Positions 1 through 31,336 of a stretch of DNA of 64,000 nt are shown in pieces. The DNA comes from Chlorokybus atmophyticus (taxonomy: Eukaryota > Plantae > Mesostigma and Chlorokybus algae): the NCBI GenBank assembly GCA_009103225.1, contig RHPI01001202.1:305206-369205 (forward strand). The letters run 5' to 3'. The notes beneath the pieces were generated by a model. The model made no database searches. It saw only the letters and a program-made list of their open reading frames with translations, and was not told the DNA's origin. Each line of letters opens with the position of its first letter. Position 1 is the first letter of the stretch. The translations under genes and the position numbers were made by a program.

Positions 1-579
1 AAACGCCAATAAGCAGGGCATTTGCTCACGGTGAGAGCTTATTAAGATGTTAACAGCCACTGCAGCCGAATGTAACTACGGTTGCCTGCCGTACGGTACC
101 AAATTGCTGAGAGACAGCAATGATGTTTGATGTGTCACATCGTTTGCTGAACCATGTGACGCAGGCTGAGTCACCCACTTGGATGACTCCAACTGGCAGC
201 ACCAATACCAATACCGCAGTCTGGCGACAGGCGCGCGTTTTGTCGTTGCTAGCGAGCAGTGCCATTATTGCTGGCCGTGCCACCATTCTCGATTTTGGCA
301 CCAGCAGCAGTGCCAGGAGGAGGAGGAGGAGGGCAAGCCGCGGCGCGGAAAAGGCTGCCGCGCCCAGTAGAACAGTCAACATGTCAATTGAACGGCGAGA
401 AAGAGAACAAAAAACAACCAAGGCGTGGGCGGCAGTGACAGTGGGGGCATGGCTAGCAGGGGGTGGCGGCGGCGGCGGGGAGGTGGCGGCGGCGGGAGCG
501 GTGGTGAGATGGTCGTTGGTATTGGTGTGCGGGGCTTGTTGATGACTGTTTACGGGTGAGAAGACGGGGGCCGGTGTCA

Positions 580-3500
580 ATGTTGATGACGCGGGGGTTT
601 GAGGCGAGCGGTTGCAGCAGCAGCGGCAGCGGCGCCAAGCACGGCCGCCTGGCCTGCAAGGGCGTCGGCGAAGCTGCTGACGCTACCGCCGGCAGCGCCA
701 ACCACGCTGGGACGCGTCGGCGACGCCGCACCTCCGACGTCGACGGAGAAGCAATTCGTGGAGCAGGAGGACGAGCAGGAGGGGCACGAGCAATCCGAGC
801 AGAGGCAGGCTGCGATGACGACGGGGCGTCGTCGTCGTCCTCTAGCAGGAAGAGCAGCAGCCGGCCGCCCTCGCAAGATTACCAACAACGCCGTGGAGGA
901 GAGCGACTAGAAGGGTCGTCGTCTCATGGGCAAGAAGCTGGCAACGGCCTCGGCAACAACCTGCAGGAGGTCGCCGCCGCCATAGGGGCTGCTGCGGCGG
1001 CGGCTGAGCAGGACGTCACAGCGACAGCTGCCACGTCCGACGCACTTGCAGCCATGCCAGATGAACGCTTTGAGTGGCCGCTCGCTGCTCAGGTAACAGC
1101 TTTGCCTTTCATCTTTGCAGCTGTCAGCTTGCATGTACTTGCATGCATGCAGTTTGTGCTTGCTGCACATGTGTTAGGAACAGCCTATATGTCAACTCAG
1201 TTGGCGACAGTGTGGTCCCCTCATTGCATACACAGCCAAGCCAGCAAGCGATTGCACACAACTGTGTTGGTACGCACGCGTCAGTCTTCAGCTCATGCGT
1301 GAAGATTACTGTTTCTCCTTCCTCTAGCAAGAAGGGCTTGCAGCAGCTTTTTGCGCATGATGTTGACAACAAGTGCAAGAGGTTCTAGTTCAACAAGAAG
1401 GGTTTGCAGCAGGGTGCCCTGGTGTAATGCAATGGTTGTCTTGCATGCACGTGTCCATCTACAAGCGGCTCAATGTCAATGCAACACCAGCACGTGTAGT
1501 TTTCACAAGAGAAATCAGCTATGTGTGCTGCAATGCAGTTGTACAGGTGTTGGTTCGCACAGTCCCATGCAGCTCTCACTTACAAGCACCTGTTACATGT
1601 GAGTTGTGTGTATCGTCCATGAGTTCACTTGCAGAAGCCTGCAACTGAATGCAAACAGTCAGCAAGTTAACAGTTGTTAGGCTGTCTGCATGCATTGAGC
1701 CACACACTGTACTAATGAGTACTTTGTTGTGTTACAGCCGCACGGCGTAACTGTGGTAGTTGAGGAGCGCACTTTCAAGATCCTGTCGATGAGCAGCAAC
1801 ATACATGAGCTCGTGTGGGAGCGACCCGCTCCGCATGGAAATCCTTATGCCGGTTTAGGTCAGGACGCTCGCAGCCTTTTCACCCCTGCGGCAGCACCTC
1901 ACATTCAGAAAGCGATGGCCGCTTCCGATCTCAGCGTGTTCAACCCTATTGCCGTTTTCACTGCCAGCAGCGGCCGCCCCTTCTTTGCCATCCTTCATCG
2001 CATCCCAGCAGGTGTGTACTTTGGTGCTTGCATGCATGTGTGCACGCCTTCCAACTCTTGCCGGCTCTGTTGGTCAACATACCTTTGCAGGTGTTGTGAT
2101 GGACTTGGAGCCCATCAGCAACAACAGTCAATCGCTCGGCCCAGTGCAGGCGGGTGCACTCGCGTCGCACAGTCTAGCCGCCGATGCAATAAACCGGTTG
2201 CAGGCCATCAGGTCAAACACAGAAGGGCCCATCTGCAACGCAGTTGTTGAAGAAGTAAGCTTACCACTACTACTCCTGGTTCCCATTGCGTGCATAGCAG
2301 TGGAGGAGTGCTAGGTAGTAACAGCCAATAGGTCTTGTTGGCTTTAAGTGTTCTGTTGAGCAGTGCATTCATGCGATCTTCTTGACAGCCCAACATAACG
2401 TGTAACATGTTGTGACTGAGAGTCTGGATTGGTATCCGCAGGTGCGAGAGCTTACTGGCTATGATCGCGTGATGGCGTACACTTTTCAGAAGGACGGGTC
2501 GGGCCAAGTGGTGGCAGAGTCGGTGCGCGAGGATCTGGAGCCATACTTGGGGCTCAACTTCCCTGCCAGTGACATTCCCAAGGAGGCGAAGAAGCTGTTT
2601 CTCAGAAATCAGAGCCGGCTGATACCCGACTGCACCGCACACAACGTGCCGATGCTGTTGGCTCCTGACGCGCCTCCTGGCATATCGTTGGCGTGCAGCA
2701 CGCTGAGAGGCGTGATGGGCTGCCACAGGCAGTACATGCACAACATGGGCACGCGGGCTTCATTGGTCATGGCCGTTATTGTGCATCATCCGCGCATGGG
2801 CAGGAACACGACGATACATTCGAGCAAAGCTTCGAAGGGGCGGCGAGTGTGGGGACTCATTGTCTGCCATCACACCACGCCGAGGACAGTGTTGTACCCG
2901 CTGCGCGCGGCATGCCAGTTCCTCATGCAGGTGTTCGGACTGCAGCTGGATGCACAGCTCGTGCGTGCGGTGTTTGAGGCAGAGAAGGCGCTGCTACGAA
3001 CGCAAACCATCCTCTGCGACATGAGCCAACGGGAAGGACTCCCTGCGAGCGCCATCACAGAAGCTCCCTCCGCAGCAGAGCTGATAGCGTGCGACGGGGC
3101 TGGCCTCTGGCACACCGGACACTTCTACGGGACGGGCCTGGTGCCAACGGAGGAGCAAGCGCATTTGATGGTGTTGTGGATGCGCGGCGCGCATGGGGAC
3201 TCTGCCGGCCTTCGCACCGACAGCCTCGTGGATGCGGGGTTCCCCTCCGGCAAGGAACTACAGGAGGCCAGCATCGTGGGCATGGCAGCGTGTCGCGTGG
3301 GCATAGACAGCTACCTTATGTGGTTCAGAAGGCCTGTTGAGCAGGTTCGCCGCTGGAGAGGAGATCTCGCTGCCGTGGCCGTGCACGATGAGCTTCACAC
3401 CTTTCAAGTCGAGGAGGAGGGGCGGACTTATGTATGGGTTCGCAGCGGCCGCAGCGAGGCGTGGGCAGACAGGGAGCTCGATGCGATACATAGCTTGCAG

Positions 3501-5084
3501 CTGGTGCTGTACGAGGCGGCCGAGTCGGATGCACGTGGCCTTCGCCTGCGGCTCAAGGAGCTCTCCATCATGGCCAACGAGATGGTGCGGTTGGTTGAGA
3601 CGGCCTCGGCGCCCATCTTTGCGGTGGATACAGCGGGAAAGCTTACGGCCTGGAATGCGAAGGTCAGCCGCCTCGCGGCCCTGCCCTTTCAAGACGCCGT
3701 TGGGAGGCACCTCGTGGCGGACATTATGGCGGATGCCAACTCTCAGGCCCGCTGCGAGCGCATGGTGCAGTTGGCGTTGCGTGGGGAGGAGGTTGCTGAC
3801 GAAGAGTTGCAGCTGCGGCGGTTTGATAGCAGTGGTTTGGGCTCGGATGCACACCTTGTGCTCAAAGTCAACACGTGCGCCACACGTAACAGCCGCGGGG
3901 AGGTGGTGGGAGTGTGCTTCGTCGGCCAGGATATGACTCAGTACCGAAGAGTACTCGATCGCTATGTGTGCCGACAAGGAGACTACACGGCACTTGTACA
4001 CAATCCCTCCCCGCTTATCCCGCCACTGTTCGGCGTTGATGCCAATGCCTGCATCAGCGAGTGGAACCTCAACATGGCCTCCCTGTCCGGCTGGGCGAAG
4101 CAGGAAGTCGAGGGGCGCCCATGCAGGTCCGTGTTTTCGCATGACGTGAACGCTTTGTGTCGGCAGCCTGACCCGGAGGTGGCGGTCCGCTTTGAAGTGG
4201 CGGTGGCGAAAGCGCTGCATACTGGCCAAGACACGGCCGCCATGTCCTTCTCGTTCAAGCCGCGTGGCAAGGATACATTAAATGTTAGGTTGACAGTGTG
4301 CGCGCGTCAAGACCGCGGGGCCACTTGTCTGCTGCAGCATGTGAGTTCTGAGCTGGAAGAGCTTATGGAGCATCAGCGAGCTGAGGAGAAGGCGTGTGCG
4401 CTGCTCGTGCGCGAGGTGGCATATCTGCGCGATCAAGTTAAGCCTCCCATAGACGGCTTGCTTGCGGCCTGCCGGTCGCTGCCGAGGGTTCTCGTGTATG
4501 ACGACCAGAGGCAAGTTGCTCAAGTGGCGGAGTCCTGCGCGGCCCAGTTGAGCATGATTACACTGGACGACGCTAATGCGGGCGGCGTTCAACCCGTTAT
4601 TGGCATCGTCGCCAAGCCCTTTGATCTTCAAGACCTCGTTAATGCGGTCATCGCGCAGGCCATGGTTGGTGCGAGCTTACGCGGGCTTCACATCTCCTCC
4701 TCAGTCACGCTGGCCGCAAAACAGATTGGTTTGGTGCTCGGCGATGCCTTGCGATTGCAACAGGTGCTGGCGGATCTTGCACGAATCGCCGTTGAGCACA
4801 CCAGGGCCGGGTACGTGGAGGTTGGAGTTGATGCCACGCCTGAGGGCCAGGCTGCTTGCGTGGTGCTGCGGGTAGCGTACACGGGAAGACCGATCGCGCG
4901 CGACCTGCACAATATGCTGGTAGATAGCAACGGCATGCTTGATCGGCGGCGCTCCTTCTCGCAGGTGTCGCTCTGCCAGCAGCTCATTGTGCTGATGGGC
5001 GGGAAAGTGTTTTATGTCAGCGAGCCCACGGCCAAGGGATACAGCTTCAATGTCCAGATGACTTTCCCCATCGCGCAGCTATGA
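580..5084 (+). CDS. PHY: Phytochrome, streptophyte type but non-canonical (NTE-nPAS-GAF-PHY-PAS-PAS-HK-related). Proposed exons 580-1092, 1738-2011, 2091-2254, 2442-5084 (~1197 aa)
   Basis: GT-AG splices join in frame: ...PLAAQ|PHGVTVVVEE...LHRIPAG|VVMDLEP...AVVEE|VRELTGYDRVMAY. The GAF has ASDIP, LRGVMGCHRQY (bilin Cys-His) and WGLIVCHH with the plant-type insert. PHY ends ELDAIHSLQL, followed by two PAS domains (LVETASAPIFAVD; NPSPLIPPLFGVD) and an HK-related tail lacking the phospho-His. Exon 1 and the start codon are less certain than the rest. Confidence 0.95.
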
Positions 5085-6899
5085 GCACTGCACAGTTTTT
5101 CCCCAACACATAGCCTTGTATATTCCCTTTGGACAGTGACATTGTCACTGTACGGTGACAGACACTGTCTGGCATTGCGCCAGACCCTAGGCGGGCATGT
5201 CCGCTGCGTGTAGCTATAAGTTATTGTTAGTGCTGTTTCTTGCGACAAGGACGCAAGTTAATTGCATGCATAGGCTTGGACCTGACTAGTTGTACCATCA
5301 ACAACAAGAGTGCCGTTCTATGATAATTTGCAGTAAAGCTAGGCTAACAATAAACGCTGCATACTTAGGTTAAGTGTACATCATGATGCAGCTGTGCTGT
5401 CACCTAGCGGTAAATCAGACAAGATAGAACTGAACTGAACTTTGTCTTGATGGTCGGACACTAGCCAATAAGAAATAGAACTACTTGCTAAACTCGTGGG
5501 GAGAAAGGCAAACAATTCGACAAAGTGAAGTACAACTTGTACTTGATTGCCATGTTGTCATATGTGAAGATGATTACTTAGTCTCTAACGCATGATAGAT
5601 CAATATTGTATTGCATGGGTGCATCAGAATTCGGCGTGTATAGCTCCCACCATCTCAATCCAATCTAATCTTGATGCAACATAGAACGCCATTTTCGGTT
5701 TGTGTGTAGCATTGCGCTCGTACAAACAAAATTAACCAACGCGATTGCGACTCACACAACCACGCATTGACACTACAAACGGCATTAAAATGTTTTGCGG
5801 CATAATGATGATGCATAGAACTGCAAACGCAAGCATAGCTTCGATATTGTTTGCATTAGGTAATGCTCATCAACCACAACCTGTGAAGGCTGGTAACGCT
5901 CTTGATCTACGCATCGCCAACTGTTGACAACACTGATATTGATATTCATATGAAGATGTATCAACCGCATCGTTACGGGCACATTGTGCTATAGACAATA
6001 TTATTCACATGGTATAGAATTTACCTTGAACAACACACAACCAATGCACAAAGCTAAGATGATTGGTGTGCACGTTGTCCTTTTAACGAATGCCAAAGCC
6101 TGAATCTGCCCATGCTCTGTCATGCGTCATATGAGGGTTTAATTCTTGAGGTTTATTCTTGCGTCGCAGTGTTAAGTCGAGTCTAGCTAAGTTGTGAAGC
6201 CCTACCTTGACCTTCATGTACGCTTTTTACTGCCTTGAAATGTGCGTGTGCGTCAAGAAAGCCATGCAGTATGGTTTGTGTGTGTATACGGTGCGCGGAC
6301 ATACGTGATGCAAATGGATATGTGCACTCTGTTGCTGCATGATCAATATGCATGCACGCAATCATCAGCATAGCACACATACAACACTATATTACACCAG
6401 GCTATGTGTGTGTGTTCAATATATGCAATGCTGTGATGTGTGTGGCATGCTGGCACGTGCCTTGTACAAACATTCTTGCTTGCTTGCTTTCTGTAGCTCA
6501 TATGCGAGTTATGCCGTTTACATACGTGTTTGAGTGATCAAAGGTTTAAGTATGAATGACATGCACTGAGCACTTCGTCAGAAGGATTATGCAGTACAAT
6601 ATAGTGTGGTGAGGAGCTGACTCACGGGAATGCCATGTACATGACTGTGAAGGCTTCATCATCAGTGGTTACCCAGCATATAGTGCTTTTCAACATAAGA
6701 GCTGCGCAAAGCAAACTCAATGACATGCGTACATGGTTGTGTAGCGTGCTGTGCTGCTCTACCTCACGGTCATGCGGACTCAAACACAACCACACACGTC
6801 ACGCACATTATATACAGCGTACGCCACAGCGACGACCTCAACTGCACAGGTGGTGCCATGCTGACGTGGTGCATGCTGCATGCAAGCTAACCCTAACCT

Positions 6900-8255: not shown

Positions 8256-10621
8256 TTAATACAGGGGCGTGCTCCCGCAGCAGTAGTATTCAAAAAAGAC
8301 TTGCTGAAGGACTTGGACCGCAGCATCCTTGATGGCTTTCCACAGCATGGCAACGCTGTCGTCTCTAAGGTCGTATCTCAACATCTTGACACCGTCCACT
8401 TCGGTGAGCGTCATGAACACAGGGCTGCTGGCATTGATTGCAGATGCAAGGGCGTGATTGAGGTCGCTTGCCCTGATACCTTGCCATTCTGCACCCACAA
8501 GGCCGAAAGTAACAACAGACGGGCACAGATTGCTCGCTGGTATGACACGGAATCGCGGGTCAGACTCAATGTGCGCTGTCAGCTTGTCTGTCTGGACTGC
8601 GGTCAGACAGAGAGCGGATTTGCTGTCTGGCGGGGCCAAGCATGCGTACAAGCTGGCTCTGATGGCCGCGACATCCAGGGCTTGGCCAATCAGAACAAAC
8701 TGCACTTTGGGTGGGTTGCCTTGCGGCCACTCGTCTTCCACAAAGTTGAATCTGCGCCGACCACTGAGCTGCAACAGGTACCTGCTGCCCTCCGCCACAT
8801 CAAACCACAGGAAGCCCTTTGCTCTGATGACCGATGGTGGCAAGTGATGTGCGATGAATTCCTGTAAATACAACGACCGTCAGAACCGGTATCAGGGTAT
8901 CAAGGCGAGACATGTGCCAGTCAACATTGAGACAACTGTGCCACCACGAACCTGAAAGCGTGCCAACACCAGTGGTCTGGTAGCACAAAATGACATAGAG
9001 ATCAGGCCGTCTTGTTCAAGGTGGTCGCCGTGGTGCATGTCGCCTTCATCAAAACTGTCATCGTGATGCTGATGATGGTGATGTCTCTCACAGGCGTTGC
9101 TGCACATGTGGGAGGCAAGGCCCCCCTCCTGCTCTTGCCAAGTATCCATGTCTTGCAGGTGTTGCACCACGGACTCCACTTCTTCGGCATGCAGCTGTTG
9201 GTTTTTTATGCAAGCACTCTGCGTTGCGGCTGTAGCAAGTATCGCAGCTAGTGGCGCCTGTCCGTAACTGCATCTGATGACAGCCGGCTGGCCTGCTACT
9301 GTTGCGTTGGGTGCCGTGAGTATGCACCTGAGAGCGTTCTCGACCTGCATATACACACAATGTTGTTTGTATACGCAGAGATAGTGTACAACTTGCAATG
9401 ATGTCATATTGCGCTGGATGCCTTGCAAGTTAATGCTAGGTACGTTTGCTGACCTCTGTGGTGCGTCTCCATGGTAGCAGGTCGACTTTGTTAAGCAGAA
9501 TAACATCTGCGCAAGTCAACTGACTTCGTGCAGCTGCACTCCCATAACATTCAGCGGAGAATGCCTGCGAACGAATCGCTTTGAGCAAGATCCTTGCGTG
9601 TAAGTGTGGTCCCTAACTAGCAACCTATCACGCATGCTCACCTCAGAGTCAACCACTGTCACGACATTTGCCAGCCACACGTATGCACGCATTGCGGTCA
9701 TGGCAAACGTCTTGATCAGCGGGAGAGGGTCGGTTACACCGCTTGTCTCGAGCACAACATGGTCGACTGCACCGTCAGCATTCTTCAGCACCTTTTCCAC
9801 AGCTGCCTGGCAAGCATCAACCAGGTTAGGTTTGTGCCAAGAGCGCAGATCAAGCGAACAGAGTGCCGACTCCAGTGTGCAATGCTACCTTTTCAAGCAA
9901 AAGGCAACACAATACCAACCTGCAAATCAGTGTTGATGGAACAGCACACGCAGCCATTTGTCAACTGCACCATGTCGGGCAGCTTGCCATTCTCTCCTTG
10001 CACGAGAGCACCATCGATATCGACGTCTCCAAACTCGTTCACCTGCACGGAATCAAATTCGACTGAGACATATGCACATGGTGTTTCAGAACAAGTGAGG
10101 CAGTAGTTATAGGCAGCGGACAGATACATACAGCATGCCTGACTGCATGGCTGCTTACCAGGACAGCAATCCTCAAGCCAGCGCTGTTGTGCAGCAAGCG
10201 GTTAAGCACGGTTGTTTTGCCACTTCCCAGAAAACCTGAGTTATCACACGGTCAGTGTCCGCACAATGCAAAACACCTACCAGCGTTCCACCACTTCACA
10301 CAATGCAACTCAAGCAAGCGCTAATACAGCTGCAAGCTAGGGTGCGCACAATTGCGGCATCAAGGCAATTGTCCCGCACGTTTGCGAAGGTGATCAACTT
10401 TGCAAGCTTGCACTTTGGCAAAATTGAGGCCACGGTTTTCAGCACGTACCAGACAGGATGGTGAGCGGCACGGCGCTCGGGCGTGTCCTCTCAGGTGCTC
10501 CCATGGCGGCGGGTCTGTCGCTGGGGTCGTTGATGTTGCTGGCTCCCCCAACCCCCCCAACTCTGCCTGTGGCGGCAGTGTTGCGGCTAGAAGAAGCTAA
10601 CCCAACATGTTGTTCGCGCAT
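8256..10621 (-). CDS. COG0523/CobW-family (ZNG1-like) metal-chaperone GTPase with His-rich linker, CobW_C domain and ~120-aa C-terminal extension. Exons 10621-10450, 10235-10159, 10042-9920, 9806-9642, 9564-9454, 9344-8952, 8861-8256 (548 aa)
   Basis: All introns are GT-AG and phases match. Motifs: VPLTILSG|FLGSGKTT (Walker A), VNEFGDVDID, NGCVCCS (CxCC), VLETSG, LLNKVD (NKxD), ERHHHHQHHDD, VIRAKGFLWF...QFVLIGQALD. The start Met could be 10621 or a later ATG. Confidence 0.93.
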
Positions 10622-21329: not shown

Positions 21330-22519
21330 ATGGAAGAGAACTCGGTGCCCACCTCAAAGGGGATAAGCTCGCAAAAAGAGCAATTACCCCGTGAAGAGGA
21401 GTTTCCATCTATGGAGGATGTTTCCAAGACGGATGATGCACTTGATGAGTCTCATCCTGGTAAGGATGTGGATGGCTTGGTGGAATCAGACGGGCCACCA
21501 TCACCACCATCATTCGTGCAGCCTGAAATCTCAATTCGCTTGACAAAACAGGAGTTGATGGAGAACTTTCTTGGCAACTATAATGAGGAGCCTTGTGAGG
21601 CGATTGTCTCGTTCGGCAACTTCCTCTTTCATGTGGCGAAAAAGATCTCAAAACTCACCACCTTTATCGGGCGAGATTGGGAGGGGTCGATGGGTGAAGG
21701 CAAACGTGTTTTGAACATGATTGAGCGCCTTCAACGCTCTGACAGTGGCCCACCTGTTCAGGCGCTTGCTCGTCCTACCGAGTTTGTTCCCAACAAGCAA
21801 ACAGAATTTTTGACTGGCTCGTAAAGCTGAGGCACTATGTTAACTCCCTTCACACTTCTGAGGAGGGGAAGTTGCATGTAGCAGAGTTGCTGATTTTAAA
21901 CGATGCTATGGCAGAGTGGTACCGCCGTAAGCAACGTGATACGAACCTCGGGCGGGAAGTGAATCGGTTGTGCTCTTTCATGGAGCAGCGCTATGGTGGC
22001 GCAGACCCTGCCCAGGTTGCTCGCAACCAGTTGCACAATCTGCGTCAAAACGGGCGTCCGGTTCAGCAGTATATCCAAGACTTCCAGTCTTTTGACAGCA
22101 AGATCAATGCTGGCAAACTACCCATCAGTGATGATGATTAGCTGGATATGTTCAGGCGTGGCTTAGACACAGATCTCGTGCAGCATGTAGCCGTCAACCC
22201 CGCGAGTTTGCAAGAGTGGGCCTCGACGGATTTACCAATGCTGATGCAGATGGTTGCTGCTGTGGACAGTGTGAAGCGCTCTCACGCAAACATGCAAACC
22301 ACAGCAAAAAAGGCAGCCCCGGCTTCAGCTGCAAAGCGCCCGGCCACTGACAACAAACCTTCTGTGAACAAGGCGAAAACATCTCAGCCTGCTGGCCCCT
22401 ACAGCGCGGCCAAATCCACCATCACCTGCAACTTCTGCAAGAAGACAGGTCATGGGGAGGCCAAGTGCTATGCAAAGCAGAATGCACAGAAGGCCAAGCA
22501 GCAGAAGGACAAAAAATAG
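21330..22519 (+). pseudogene. Chromovirus gag (frameshift near 21805, TAG at 22139-22141)
   Basis: ARNQLHNLRQNGRPVQQYIQDF (retrotransposon gag core) and CNFCKKTGHGEAKC zinc knuckle. Confidence 0.9.
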
Positions 22520-22522
22520 GAA

Positions 22523-22933
22523 TTGTCTGTGGTTGGTAGCTTACTCGAGCAGAACAACTTAAAAAACTCTGTACTTCTTAAAAAAGTTTCCTCTCTTTAT
22601 GATGTATCAGATGTATGGACTGATATGAGCACACCACCTGTGTTGACAAATGCAAACGGTTGTGTTTTAAACAATGTTCCATTCTCTAAATTGGTAACTG
22701 CTGTTAAGCACTTACACGAGTTGCAATTACAACATGCTGTTACTGCATGTGTAGTTATCCCTCGATATCATGGCCCGTGGTCGCGATTGTTACAAGGGGG
22801 AGAAGTAATTATGCAACTCTCACGCAAAGATACAGGAACTTCACCGTTACAAGTGATCTTTATCAAGCCTGCTACCAATCACGGCACTCAAACATTGGCT
22901 ACATTTAATGGTCACTCAGTGCCACTCAAATAG
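22523..22933 (+). pseudogene. N6-adenine DNA methyltransferase-like (NPPF-type) domain between gag and protease
   Basis: CVLNNVPFSKLVTAVKHL...TACVVIPRYHGPWSRLL resembles the Dam/DIRS-type pattern NPPF..i..vl.k...a.lvvP.w...W..lL. In frame with both gag and pol. Confidence 0.55.
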
Positions 22934-30145: not shown

Positions 30146-31264
30146 ATGACTTCCATTGACGAGCAATTGGATGACATCTTCAACACCATGAATAAGGACA
30201 TTGCCAGTCAAGTTCGGGTGCCCAAGAAAACCTTGTCTCAGAAGCAACGTGGTTCGCTGGATGGTGGAGGCATCGAGCCAACTGAGTATCAACATGACAA
30301 CCTCAACATGGAGGAACTCAACGTATTGTTTGACAAAGCGCGTGCTGATCATGATTGCTTTACAGCTGAGTCTGCCATAAACCCTGCGCCAGGTAATACT
30401 TTGCATTGTTGACTCTGTATTCTTTGGTTGACTCTTGTGCCATGTTAATTATTGTGGCGGCTAAACATGATCGCATTCTTGGTCACAGGTACCATAAAAT
30501 ACTTTCTACGTCGAGTCGGCGTCACCCTGAATGCCAACACCACTAGAGATGAAGCATATTCTGCTTGGTGGCGTCAATTTGCTTTGAAGCCATGGCAACT
30601 TTACGAGCTGGTAATTACATTCAAGCGCGCATTGCTCAGTGCAAAGCGATACACACAGAAAAGGCTGACAAGATTATCGAGGCATTATTGGAAGCCCAAA
30701 TGAAGGCTGAAGGTACTCAATTGTGTCCACATTCTCCTGATGATAATGTGCACAGCTGGTTCGCATGAATCAATATAAATCAGTACAATACCTTGCATAT
30801 AACATATACTGCAATCCGCAGGTCAACGTGCAGCGGAAGACGGCGACATTGGCGTGAACAATGGACAGTATACACCAGCAACACCCATTGCCGTTCCACC
30901 GACAAAAGGGCAAAAACTCAAAGTGAAATCCAACTACACTGTACCGAATTATCTTCAACTCTACCGGGAATTCCTACATCGGCCAAACCATAACGTAAAG
31001 CGGCGGCTGCAACAACACTTAAGAAACCCACCTAAACTACTGGCTCGCGATCTACAGCCAGGTGTACCACTTAATGAACAATGTACCATAGAGCATTTAC
31101 GCATGGTAGATAGTAAAATAGATGCTGATCGGGTAGAGGCGCATTATATCAAGGTTTATAATGCAATAGGCAACAGTGGCTACAGTACCTTGAGAGGTCG
31201 ATTAGGATTCGACAATAAGTTCTGGAAGTTATTGAGAACCTCAAAGTTAGGGACACAACAGTAG
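30146..31264 (+). pseudogene. Three-exon gene ending in a GIY-YIG endonuclease domain, directly downstream of and co-oriented with the Helitron helicase
   Basis: Introns at ~30393-30488 and ~30713-30821. An alternate frame reads LYRIIFNSTGNSYIGQT (~30939-30989); the main frame then reads NVKRRLQQH...ADRVEAHYIKVYNAIGNSGYSTL. Confidence 0.75.
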
Positions 31265-31336
31265 TATATAATTTTAATCAGAGTTTACCGAGTTAATACA
31301 ATTCAATGCTCATTTTCTTGATAAGTGTTTATATGC

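What the first reader, a model, noticed from the sequence alone, without database searches (positions are those of the whole stretch)
3354..3464. Phytochrome with an intact bilin pocket but a completely replaced PHY tongue (PRxSF absent)
Seen: between the flanking tryptophans the segment WRGDLAAVAVHDELHTFQVEEEGRTYVWVRSGRSEAW has the same length (37 aa) as the plant consensus [37 protein letters not shown]. PRSSF aligns to VEEEG, WGG to WRG and FxE to YxW. The other two frames do not hide the motif. The GAF pocket residues are retained (DIP, R..I, LRGV, CH, QY, CHH). Established: the tongue Arg and Ser contact the DIP Asp and refold between Pr and Pfr. Inference: this receptor probably binds bilin but has altered or absent photoconversion (locked, fast-reverting, spectrally shifted or fluorescent), and may be a new functional phytochrome class.
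Basis: partly seen in the sequence, partly recalled or inferred. Interest (0 to 1): 0.78.

Follow-up and report, generated by a model that had tools for sequence, protein, structure and literature searches.

The report
Algal phytochrome lacking the PRxSF tongue
A transcribed red-light-receptor (phytochrome) gene of the alga Chlorokybus keeps every residue needed to hold its pigment but has lost the almost universal PRxSF "tongue" latch, and its one known ortholog has lost it too, so this is a natural test of what that latch is for.

Summary
It aligns without gaps to Arabidopsis phyB W563-W599, with VEEEG in place of PRSSF, WRG in place of WGG and YVW in place of FLE. No other reading frame hides the motif.

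The gene is Chlorokybus Chlat1/7288 (Chrsp58S06918, 1197 aa). Its CDS is 580-1089, 1735-2007, 2087-2254 and 2442-5084. Spliced RNA contigs from four runs in two studies confirm the gene model. In two of those runs the contig matches the window with zero differences across the tongue.

Among 120 streptophyte phytochromes, 118 carry PRxS[F/L]. The two exceptions are this protein and its only close relative, P0002 (about 50% identity, probably Spirotaenia minuta). The two form a fast-evolving sister pair inside the canonical Mesostigma/Chlorokybus phytochrome clade. The second Chlorokybus paralog has a normal PRKSF.

The bilin pocket is intact: DIP Asp, both propionate Arg residues, Cys-His, the Tyr residues and His. 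The tongue stem is conserved between the two orthologs, but the PRxSF positions are not.

My reading is a functional, bilin-binding paralog whose Asp-Arg/Ser latch was lost long ago. This predicts an altered photoproduct, most likely unstable or fast-reverting. Photochemistry was not tested. I class it as a new variant of a known kind.

The parts
515..5311 (+). Extent of the mRNA as covered by one spliced RNA contig (run X1, 3886 nt, 0 differences)
   Evidence: table 8
580..1089 (+). CDS exon 1 (residues 1-170): long Ala/Gly/Ser/Arg-rich N-terminal extension, plus the start of the PAS region with ERFEWPL where canonical phytochromes read QRMQRGG
   Evidence: In-frame indels between strains fall at 613-809 (table 4)
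1090..1734 (+). Intron 1 (GT..AG), spliced out in all four runs
   Evidence: table 5
1735..2007 (+). CDS exon 2 (PAS_2 domain)
2087..2254 (+). CDS exon 3 (end of PAS, knot, start of GAF). It is flanked by introns 2008-2086 and 2255-2441
2442..5084 (+). CDS exon 4 (residues 318-1197 plus stop; 881 codons): GAF, PHY, PAS-PAS and the HATPase_c-type kinase-related domain
2571..2579 (+). DIP motif (D361-I-P; phyB D307 equivalent), followed by KEAKK where canonical phytochromes read QASRF
2721..2726 (+). Chromophore-binding Cys-His (C411-H412; phyB C357-H358 equivalents)
2997..3527 (+). PHY domain (Pfam PF00360, residues 503-679). It scores only 76.7 bits, against 175-186 bits for the canonical Chlorokybus and Mesostigma proteins
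3354..3464 (+). PHY tongue, W622-W658 (phyB W563-W599 equivalent)
3354..3362 (+). WRG in place of W(G/A)G. The Arg sits at the phyB G564 position and is conserved in the ortholog P0002
3408..3422 (+). VEEEG at the positions of PRxSF (phyB P581-F585)
3426..3443 (+). TYVWVR exit strand. T is at the phyB A587 position and is shared with P0002. YVW replaces the (W/F/Y)xE motif
4740..5060 (+). HATPase_c-like domain of the kinase-related region (residues 1084-1190). No HisKA match lies upstream of it

Best explanation
This is an expressed, selectively maintained paralog of the canonical plant-type phytochrome, specific to the Chlorokybus/Spirotaenia lineage. It arose by duplication within the Mesostigma/Chlorokybus phytochrome clade and then evolved about four times faster than its canonical sister copy. 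It keeps everything needed to attach and hold a bilin covalently: Cys411-His, the DIP Asp, both propionate Arg residues, the gating Tyr residues and His459. It also keeps a folded PAS-GAF-PHY module with a hairpin-shaped tongue stem. What it has lost is the PRxSF latch. In other phytochromes the Arg of that motif salt-bridges the DIP Asp in Pr, and its Ser hydrogen-bonds the same Asp after the tongue refolds to a helix in Pfr. The inferred consequence is that the protein still binds phycocyanobilin and forms a red-absorbing dark state, but its photoproduct lacks the canonical stabilisation. The most likely outcome is an incompletely formed or fast-reverting Pfr-like state. The receptor would then report irradiance or temperature more than the red/far-red ratio, and might act together with the canonical paralog. 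Shown here: gene structure, transcription, loss of the motif, its sharing by the ortholog, the retained pocket and fold. Inferred only: bilin binding, the photocycle and the signalling role.
For: Sequence and alignment. The gene model equals P0001 exactly. Spliced RNA contigs occur in 4 runs from 2 studies, with 0 differences in X1 and X2 over 2442-5311. The two roughly 5%-diverged strains (X3, X4) have no frameshifting indel in the last exon. In the whole 1.84-billion-representative library only P0002 is a close relative, and it also lacks PRxSF. In the tree, P0001+P0002 are sisters (SH-aLRT 100) on a long stem inside the clade {Mesostigma Mv06169, Chlorokybus P0003}, and both of those carry PRxSF. 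Maintained new state: 26 of the 57 canonical-invariant positions changed in both orthologs carry the same derived residue, whereas the four conserved PRxSF positions (P, R, S, F) differ between the two. Between the orthologs, tongue entry is 59% identical, exit 53% and centre 0%. Pocket residues are kept in both orthologs. The AF2 model of residues 155-700 has pLDDT 87.6 with the tongue modelled as a hairpin. Its best structural matches are plant phyB/phyA photosensory modules, TM 0.81 to Pr structures and 0.75-0.77 to Pfr complexes. Role of the lost contacts, from the literature: S584 hydrogen-bonds D307 in phyB Pfr (PMC12098889). S584A/E/F and A587T speed dark reversion, while G564E and R582A slow it (PMC11379985). 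PHY-less phyB 1-450 bleaches without forming Pfr and reverts (PMC5651913).
Against: No spectroscopy, bilin-binding or signalling data exist for this protein. The substitutions point in opposite directions in phyB mutants: G564 and R582 changes stabilise Pfr, while S584 and A587 changes destabilise it, so the net photocycle cannot be predicted from sequence. Compensation is conceivable through the conserved Arg in WRG, the conserved Thr at the A587 position, or basic residues after DIP facing an acidic tongue tip. AF2 models this tongue with higher confidence than the canonical paralog's, so there is no sign that it is disordered. Selection on the tongue among Chlorokybus species could not be measured, because the variant rows for that region were not displayed. 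The organism of P0002 is inferred by elimination, not read from a record.
Confidence: 0.6

Rival explanations
1. Rewired but normal photoreceptor. The latch functions have moved to new positions, so red/far-red photoreversibility and tongue refolding are essentially preserved. Candidates are the conserved Arg of WRG on the strand opposite the old PRxSF reaching the DIP Asp in Pr, and the conserved Thr (phyB A587 position, one helical turn after S584) reaching it in a helical photoproduct. Alternatively, the new Lys/Arg residues after DIP could pair with the acidic tongue tip.
For: WRG and the Thr are shared derived states in both orthologs. The segment after DIP became basic in both (KEAKK and RPVQK), while the tongue tip carries an acidic cluster in both (VEEE and LEET). 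AF2 predicts a defined hairpin. PMC11379985 describes WGG as lying opposite PRxSF in the hairpin.
Against: No coordinates or distances were available to check any of these contacts. The acidic clusters align only if a gap is shifted. In phyB, A587T and changes at G564 themselves alter reversion strongly (PMC11379985), so a fully normal cycle would be surprising.
Confidence: 0.22
2. Light-blind pseudo-receptor. The protein no longer transduces light and survives as a scaffold or as a heterodimer partner modulating the canonical paralog, or it is drifting towards loss.
For: It has the highest rate of change of any streptophyte canonical-type phytochrome sampled: 31-34% of invariant photosensory positions are changed. 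The Pfam PHY score is halved and HisKA is no longer detected. The PRxSF positions are unconstrained between the orthologs.
Against: Every chromophore-contacting residue checked is conserved across two orthologs that are only about 50% identical, which is hard to explain without bilin binding. 26 shared derived residues indicate purifying selection after the shift. The gene is transcribed at the same order of magnitude as the canonical paralog in three runs, though this is a rough measure from contig k-mer depth. The ORF is open in four strains.
Confidence: 0.15
3. Artefact: an assembly error, compensated frameshift, inversion or unspliced mini-intron creates a false tongue sequence.
For: The segment has the same length as the canonical tongue but unrelated sequence, which is what a double frameshift would look like.
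Against: No alternative frame or strand encodes the motif. RNA contigs from two independent studies are identical to the genome and have no joint inside 2442-5311. An independent ortholog has the same state.
Confidence: 0.01

Closest known systems
Canonical 'Mesostigmatales PHY1/2' phytochromes (Li et al. 2015, PMC4525182; Wang et al. 2020, PMC7027972): Chlorokybus Chrsp23S03694 (P0003) and Mesostigma viride Mv06169 (P0122)
   Same: Same clade. Same PAS_2-GAF-PHY-PAS-PAS-HATPase_c architecture without a REC domain. Same bilin-pocket residues. 43-49% identity.
   Different: Those proteins carry W(A)G, PR(K/A)SF and F(L/Q)E in the tongue and a detectable HisKA. They differ from the streptophyte consensus at only 12-18% of invariant photosensory positions, against 34% here. 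Both papers list the Chlorokybus genes as canonical. In the main texts searched (and the one held Li 2015 supplement, searched only for taxon names), no mention of the tongue was found.
Arabidopsis phyB hairpin mutants (G564E, R582A, S584A/E/F, A587T)
   Same: The same positions are altered naturally here: G564 to R, R582 to E, S584 to E, F585 to G, A587 to T.
   Different: Those are single laboratory substitutions with measured reversion phenotypes (PMC11379985). Here all occur together, in an old natural lineage, with unknown net effect.
PHY-less or tongue-less photosensory fragments (for example phyB 1-450)
   Same: They lack the Asp-Ser/Arg latch. They bind bilin and form Pr, but bleach instead of forming a stable Pfr (PMC5651913).
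   Different: This protein keeps a complete, confidently folded PHY domain and the tongue stem.
Charophyte PHYX1 non-canonical phytochromes (Li et al. 2015)
   Same: The PHYX1-like representatives P0168, P0169 and P0180 also lack PRxSF.
   Different: They also lack DIP and the GAF Cys-His, sit far away in the tree, and are described as possibly not binding bilin (PMC4525182). The protein here keeps the whole pocket.

Membership tests
Canonical plant-type phytochrome (p-PHY) | N-terminal PAS_2-GAF-PHY photosensory tridomain | tested here: met
   Pfam PAS_2 74 bits, GAF 50 bits, PHY 77 bits, all above their cut-offs. AF2 pLDDT 87.6. Foldseek TM 0.81 to phyB 7rzw and 6tl4.
Canonical plant-type phytochrome (p-PHY) | GAF-domain Cys for the bilin thioether, plus the DIP Asp, His, Tyr and Arg pocket residues | tested here: met
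   C411-H412, D361-I-P, the R376 and R406 equivalents, Y330, Y415 and H459 align to phyB C357/H358, D307, R322, R352, Y276, Y361 and H403. Y303 is replaced by F.
Canonical plant-type phytochrome (p-PHY) | Tongue motifs W(G/A)G, PRxSF and (W/F/Y)xE | tested here: not met
   WRG, VEEEG and YVW occupy these positions. 118 of 120 relatives carry PRxS[F/L].
Canonical plant-type phytochrome (p-PHY) | C-terminal PAS-PAS plus a histidine-kinase-related domain, without a phospho-acceptor His and without REC | tested here: met
   Two PAS stretches and HATPase_c are found, and no REC. The H-box position reads AYLRDQVKPP with no His (direct reading). HisKA falls below detection, unlike in P0003.
Canonical plant-type phytochrome (p-PHY) | Phylogenetic placement within the streptophyte canonical clade | tested here: met
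   It sits inside the {Mesostigma, Chlorokybus} clade (SH-aLRT 99), which with the other canonical streptophyte phytochromes forms one clade (SH-aLRT 100). The branch is long and the amino-acid composition deviates.
Canonical plant-type phytochrome (p-PHY) | Red/far-red photoreversible Pr/Pfr cycle | not testable with these tools
   This needs recombinant holoprotein spectroscopy.
Charophyte PHYX1 | Absence of all conserved bilin-binding Cys residues, and non-canonical placement | tested here: not met
   The Cys-His and DIP are present. PHYX1-like representatives form a separate clade.

The most novel reading that the evidence does not exclude
The Chlorokybus/Spirotaenia lineage holds a distinct natural class of plant-type phytochrome. 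In it the universal Asp-Arg (Pr) / Asp-Ser (Pfr) tongue latch has been replaced by a different docking mode: an Arg on the entry strand (WRG), a basic patch after DIP facing an acidic tongue tip, and a remodelled N-terminal ERFxWPL motif. This would give a photocycle unlike Pr/Pfr switching, for example a very fast-reverting irradiance or temperature sensor, or a Pr-stabilised strongly fluorescent state. It would show that bilin photosensing and tongue refolding can be uncoupled in nature.
Probability: 0.35. Interest if true: 0.75.

Novelty: new variant of a known kind. Interest (0 to 1): 0.6.

Why it matters
The PRxSF motif is treated as the conserved coupling element between bilin isomerisation and the beta-to-alpha tongue refolding that drives phytochrome signalling from bacteria to plants. 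A natural lineage hundreds of millions of years old keeps the chromophore pocket and the PHY domain but discards that latch. It sits next to a canonical paralog in the same cell. This gives a ready-made comparison pair for two questions: what the latch is needed for (Pfr stability, thermal reversion, output coupling), and whether other docking solutions exist. It also bears on how the earliest-diverging streptophytes sense light, because published analyses count both Chlorokybus genes as canonical. It could also yield a naturally tuned scaffold, fast-reverting or fluorescent, for optogenetics.

Tried and rejected
(1) Hidden motif in another frame or on the other strand, a compensated frameshift or an inversion: none found.

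(2) A cryptic intron inside the tongue: RNA contigs are colinear across it.

(3) A word search restricted to the tongue region (P0001 residues 596-680) returned only the query itself. An 85-residue region is too short for a database of 5.8 billion sequences, so this says nothing about relatives.

(4) The look-up of encoding contigs for P0002 found no record. Its organism could only be inferred: its UniParc id UPI00067A5F85 falls in the same id range as P0168 (UPI00067A6B16), a PHYX1-like protein, which suggests the Li et al. 2015 submissions. Li et al. list Mesostigma, Chlorokybus 1 and 2, and Spirotaenia minuta. Mesostigma is accounted for by P0122.

(5) dN/dS in the tongue among Chlorokybus strains: read laying displayed only 40 of 292 variant rows, none in the tongue, and its cap is one call. 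The visible rows give 7 synonymous to 4 non-synonymous codon changes in the PAS exon, and many non-synonymous changes in the N-terminal extension.

(6) Reading AF2 confidence as evidence of tongue disorder: rejected. With the same alignment rows, the canonical paralog's tongue scores lower (pLDDT 47-56, no secondary structure) than this one (62-88, hairpin).

(7) Several other 'PRxSF-less' representatives turned out to be conservative variants (PKKSF, ARRSF, PHSSF), what look like truncated or mis-modelled plant genes (judged from the alignment only), or PHYX1-like proteins without a pocket.

Full report
**What is at the coordinates**

It lies inside an 890-codon ORF (2412-5084). Pfam reads this ORF as GAF, PHY, two PAS domains and HATPase_c, and an upstream ORF carries PAS_2. 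A search against solved structures aligns the ORF to Arabidopsis phyB (7rzw) at E = 6e-144. The tongue aligns without any gap: phyB W563-G-G corresponds to W-R-G, P581-R-S-S-F585 to V-E-E-E-G, and F588-L-E590 to Y-V-W, and the closing W599 is kept. No other frame or strand of 3300-3520 encodes PRxSF.

**Which gene, and is the sequence real**

The ORF is 100% identical to EukProt/JGI protein Chlat1/7288, Chrsp58S06918, of Chlorokybus atmophyticus (P0001, 1197 aa). Joining 580-1089, 1735-2007, 2087-2254 and 2442-5084 reproduces that protein exactly.

Four public runs from two studies hold contigs that skip exactly these three GT..AG introns. They are therefore transcript assemblies, and the gene is transcribed and spliced.
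- In X1 one 3886-nt contig covers 515-5311 with zero differences.
- In X2 (a 2013 run from the other study) a contig covers 2178-5314 with zero differences.
- The tongue sequence is thus confirmed from independent RNA data, and there is no joint inside it.
- X3 and X4 are about 5% diverged (141-145 differences over the last exon), which suggests other strains or species. They show no frameshifting indel in that exon. The only coding indels are in-frame and lie in the N-terminal extension.

The variant rows for the tongue itself were not displayed, so selection there could not be measured. The visible rows give 7 synonymous to 4 non-synonymous codon changes in the PAS exon.

Contigs of the second Chlorokybus phytochrome cross-match at 2721-2777. 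Their k-mer depths are roughly 1.6-1.9 times those of this gene. This is a rough sign that both paralogs are expressed at the same order of magnitude.

**How unusual the tongue is**

Among the 120 best hits (streptophyte algae to angiosperms), 118 carry PRxS[F/L] in an otherwise nearly invariant tongue. Of these, 116 match the strict W[GA]G..PRxSF pattern; P0029 (GGG, PRSSF present) and P0096 (PRSSL) are near-misses. The only two without the motif are this protein and P0002.

P0002 (1261 aa; 48% identity over the exon-4 query, 50% over the whole protein) is known only as UniParc UPI00067A5F85. An exhaustive HMMER pass over 1.84 billion cluster representatives found no other close relative. P0002 scores 1020 bits, and the next full-length phytochrome scores 707.

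Li et al. 2015 list four 'Mesostigmatales PHY1/2' sequences: Mesostigma viride, Chlorokybus 1 and 2, and Spirotaenia minuta. The 707-bit protein P0122 is Mesostigma viride Mv06169. By elimination P0002 is most probably the Spirotaenia minuta sequence. This is an inference.

The P0002 tongue reads WRGDRASILVHGDKLEETDKKNTFVEKVTGRSEEW.

**Phylogeny and pattern of change**

A maximum-likelihood tree was built from 37 rows and 1110 columns.
- P0001+P0002 are sisters (SH-aLRT 100) on a long stem (0.62), with long tips (0.94 and 0.67).
- They sit inside a clade (support 99) with the canonical Chlorokybus paralog P0003 (tip 0.40) and Mesostigma P0122.
- This clade and the clade of all other canonical streptophyte phytochromes together form one group with support 100.
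- Their position next to P0003, which would place the duplication after the Mesostigma split, has weaker support (81).

At 239 photosensory columns that are at least 94% conserved in 33 canonical phytochromes, P0003 differs at 28, Mesostigma at 42, P0001 at 81 and P0002 at 73.

Of the 57 positions changed in both orthologs, 26 carry the same derived residue. Examples are RGG to WPL in the QRGG motif, Y303F, F to K after DIP, and A587T and L to V in the tongue exit. This is the signature of an early shift followed by conservation, not decay.

Within the tongue the two orthologs are 59% identical in the entry (RWRGD.A..VH) and 53% in the exit (T[YF]V..V..GRSE.W). They are 0% identical over the 13 central residues that include the PRxSF positions. 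The only other equally unconserved window is a GAF surface loop. If a gap is shifted, an acidic element (VEEE versus LEET) can be aligned, but this may be chance.

The Pfam PHY score falls to 77 and 106 bits, against 175 and 186 bits in the canonical relatives. HisKA is no longer detected in either ortholog.

**The pocket and the fold**

Both orthologs keep the DIP Asp, the two propionate-binding Arg residues, Cys-His, the Tyr residues and the His-His. The Tyr at the phyB-303 position is Phe in both.

PHYX1-like representatives (P0168, P0169, P0180) lack DIP, Cys-His and PRxSF together. This matches Li et al.'s description of PHYX1 as lacking the conserved cysteines (PMC4525182).

An AlphaFold2 model of residues 155-700 has mean pLDDT 87.6. 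The tongue is modelled as follows:
- paired strands at residues 618-623 and 646-651;
- a short helix at 626-631;
- a less confident acidic tip, with pLDDT about 62.

The best structural matches are plant phyB and phyA photosensory modules. TM-scores are 0.81 to the Pr structures 7rzw and 6tl4, and 0.75-0.77 to the phyB-Pfr-PIF6 complexes.

As a control, the canonical paralog was folded with the same rows. Its tongue received lower confidence (47-56) and no secondary structure. Model confidence therefore gives no support to the idea that this tongue is disordered.

**Mechanism**

Established knowledge, as read in the papers:
- In phyB the hairpin covers the pocket in Pr. In Pfr it refolds to a helix in which S584 hydrogen-bonds D307 (PMC12098889).
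- S584A/E/F and A587T accelerate dark reversion, while G564E (about 450-fold) and R582A slow it (PMC11379985).
- A PHY-less fragment bleaches without forming Pfr and reverts in the dark (PMC5651913).

Here the equivalents of G564, R582, S584, F585 and A587 are all changed (to R, E, E, G and T). The PRxSF positions drift freely between the orthologs, while the pocket and the stem are held.

The best-supported reading is a bilin-binding receptor that has lost the state-specific Asp latch long ago. Its photoproduct is then expected to be poorly stabilised, either fast-reverting or incompletely formed. I give this reading 0.6. The direction of the effect cannot be derived from sequence, because the individual substitutions act in opposite senses in phyB.

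The main rival is compensation from new positions (0.22): the conserved Arg of WRG on the strand opposite PRxSF, the conserved Thr one helical turn after the old Ser, or a basic patch after DIP facing an acidic tip. A light-blind partner or scaffold gets 0.15, and it is disfavoured by the fully conserved pocket. An artefact is excluded.

**Comparison and novelty**

The gene is already known and annotated. Li et al. 2015 and Wang et al. 2020 both count the two Chlorokybus genes as canonical plant phytochromes. Text searches of the two papers found no mention of the tongue or of PRxSF; the held Li 2015 supplement was searched only for taxon names. Literature searches on PRxSF, tongue and algal phytochromes found mutagenesis and length-variation studies, but no natural Cys-bearing PAS-GAF-PHY phytochrome lacking the motif. 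That search covers open-access text only.

I class it as a new variant of a known kind. It meets every tested feature of a canonical plant-type phytochrome except the tongue motifs.

**Limits**

No photochemistry was measured. The organism of P0002 is inferred. Selection within the tongue among Chlorokybus species is unmeasured. No atomic distances could be read from the models.

Noticed in passing
P0003 (second Chlorokybus phytochrome, Chrsp23S03694), residues around the DIP motif: The canonical paralog reads TDTPQ where every other phytochrome in the alignment reads DIP or DVP. This is an Ile-to-Thr change inside the otherwise invariant DIP motif.
   Followed up: no
window 613-809 (exon 1, N-terminal extension): In-frame indels of 3, 9 and 12 nt, and many non-synonymous differences, separate the Chlorokybus strains or species in runs X3 and X4 from the window. 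The low-complexity N-terminal extension evolves much faster than the PAS exon.
   Followed up: partly
window 2721-2777: RNA contigs of the paralog P0003 cross-match this Cys-His region with 7 mismatches. Their k-mer depth is about 1.6-1.9 times that of this gene's contig in three runs, so both paralogs appear to be expressed at a similar order of magnitude.
   Followed up: partly
proteins P0168, P0169, P0180 (library representatives; P0168 = UniParc UPI00067A6B16): This is a separate eukaryotic phytochrome clade lacking DIP, the GAF Cys-His and PRxSF, with a shortened tongue starting W[IA]W. It matches the description of charophyte PHYX1.
   Followed up: partly
window 456-495: Several unrelated transcript contigs match this short GC-rich, GGC-repeat-like stretch upstream of the start codon and then run on into unlike sequence. 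It is probably a low-complexity repeat shared by many genes.
   Followed up: no
window 8300-8600, 22500-22900, 30900-31300: Earlier notes of the scan flag three features elsewhere in the window: a CobW-like GTPase fusion, a chromovirus with a methyltransferase-like insert, and a Helitron-linked GIY-YIG motif. None was examined here.
   Followed up: no
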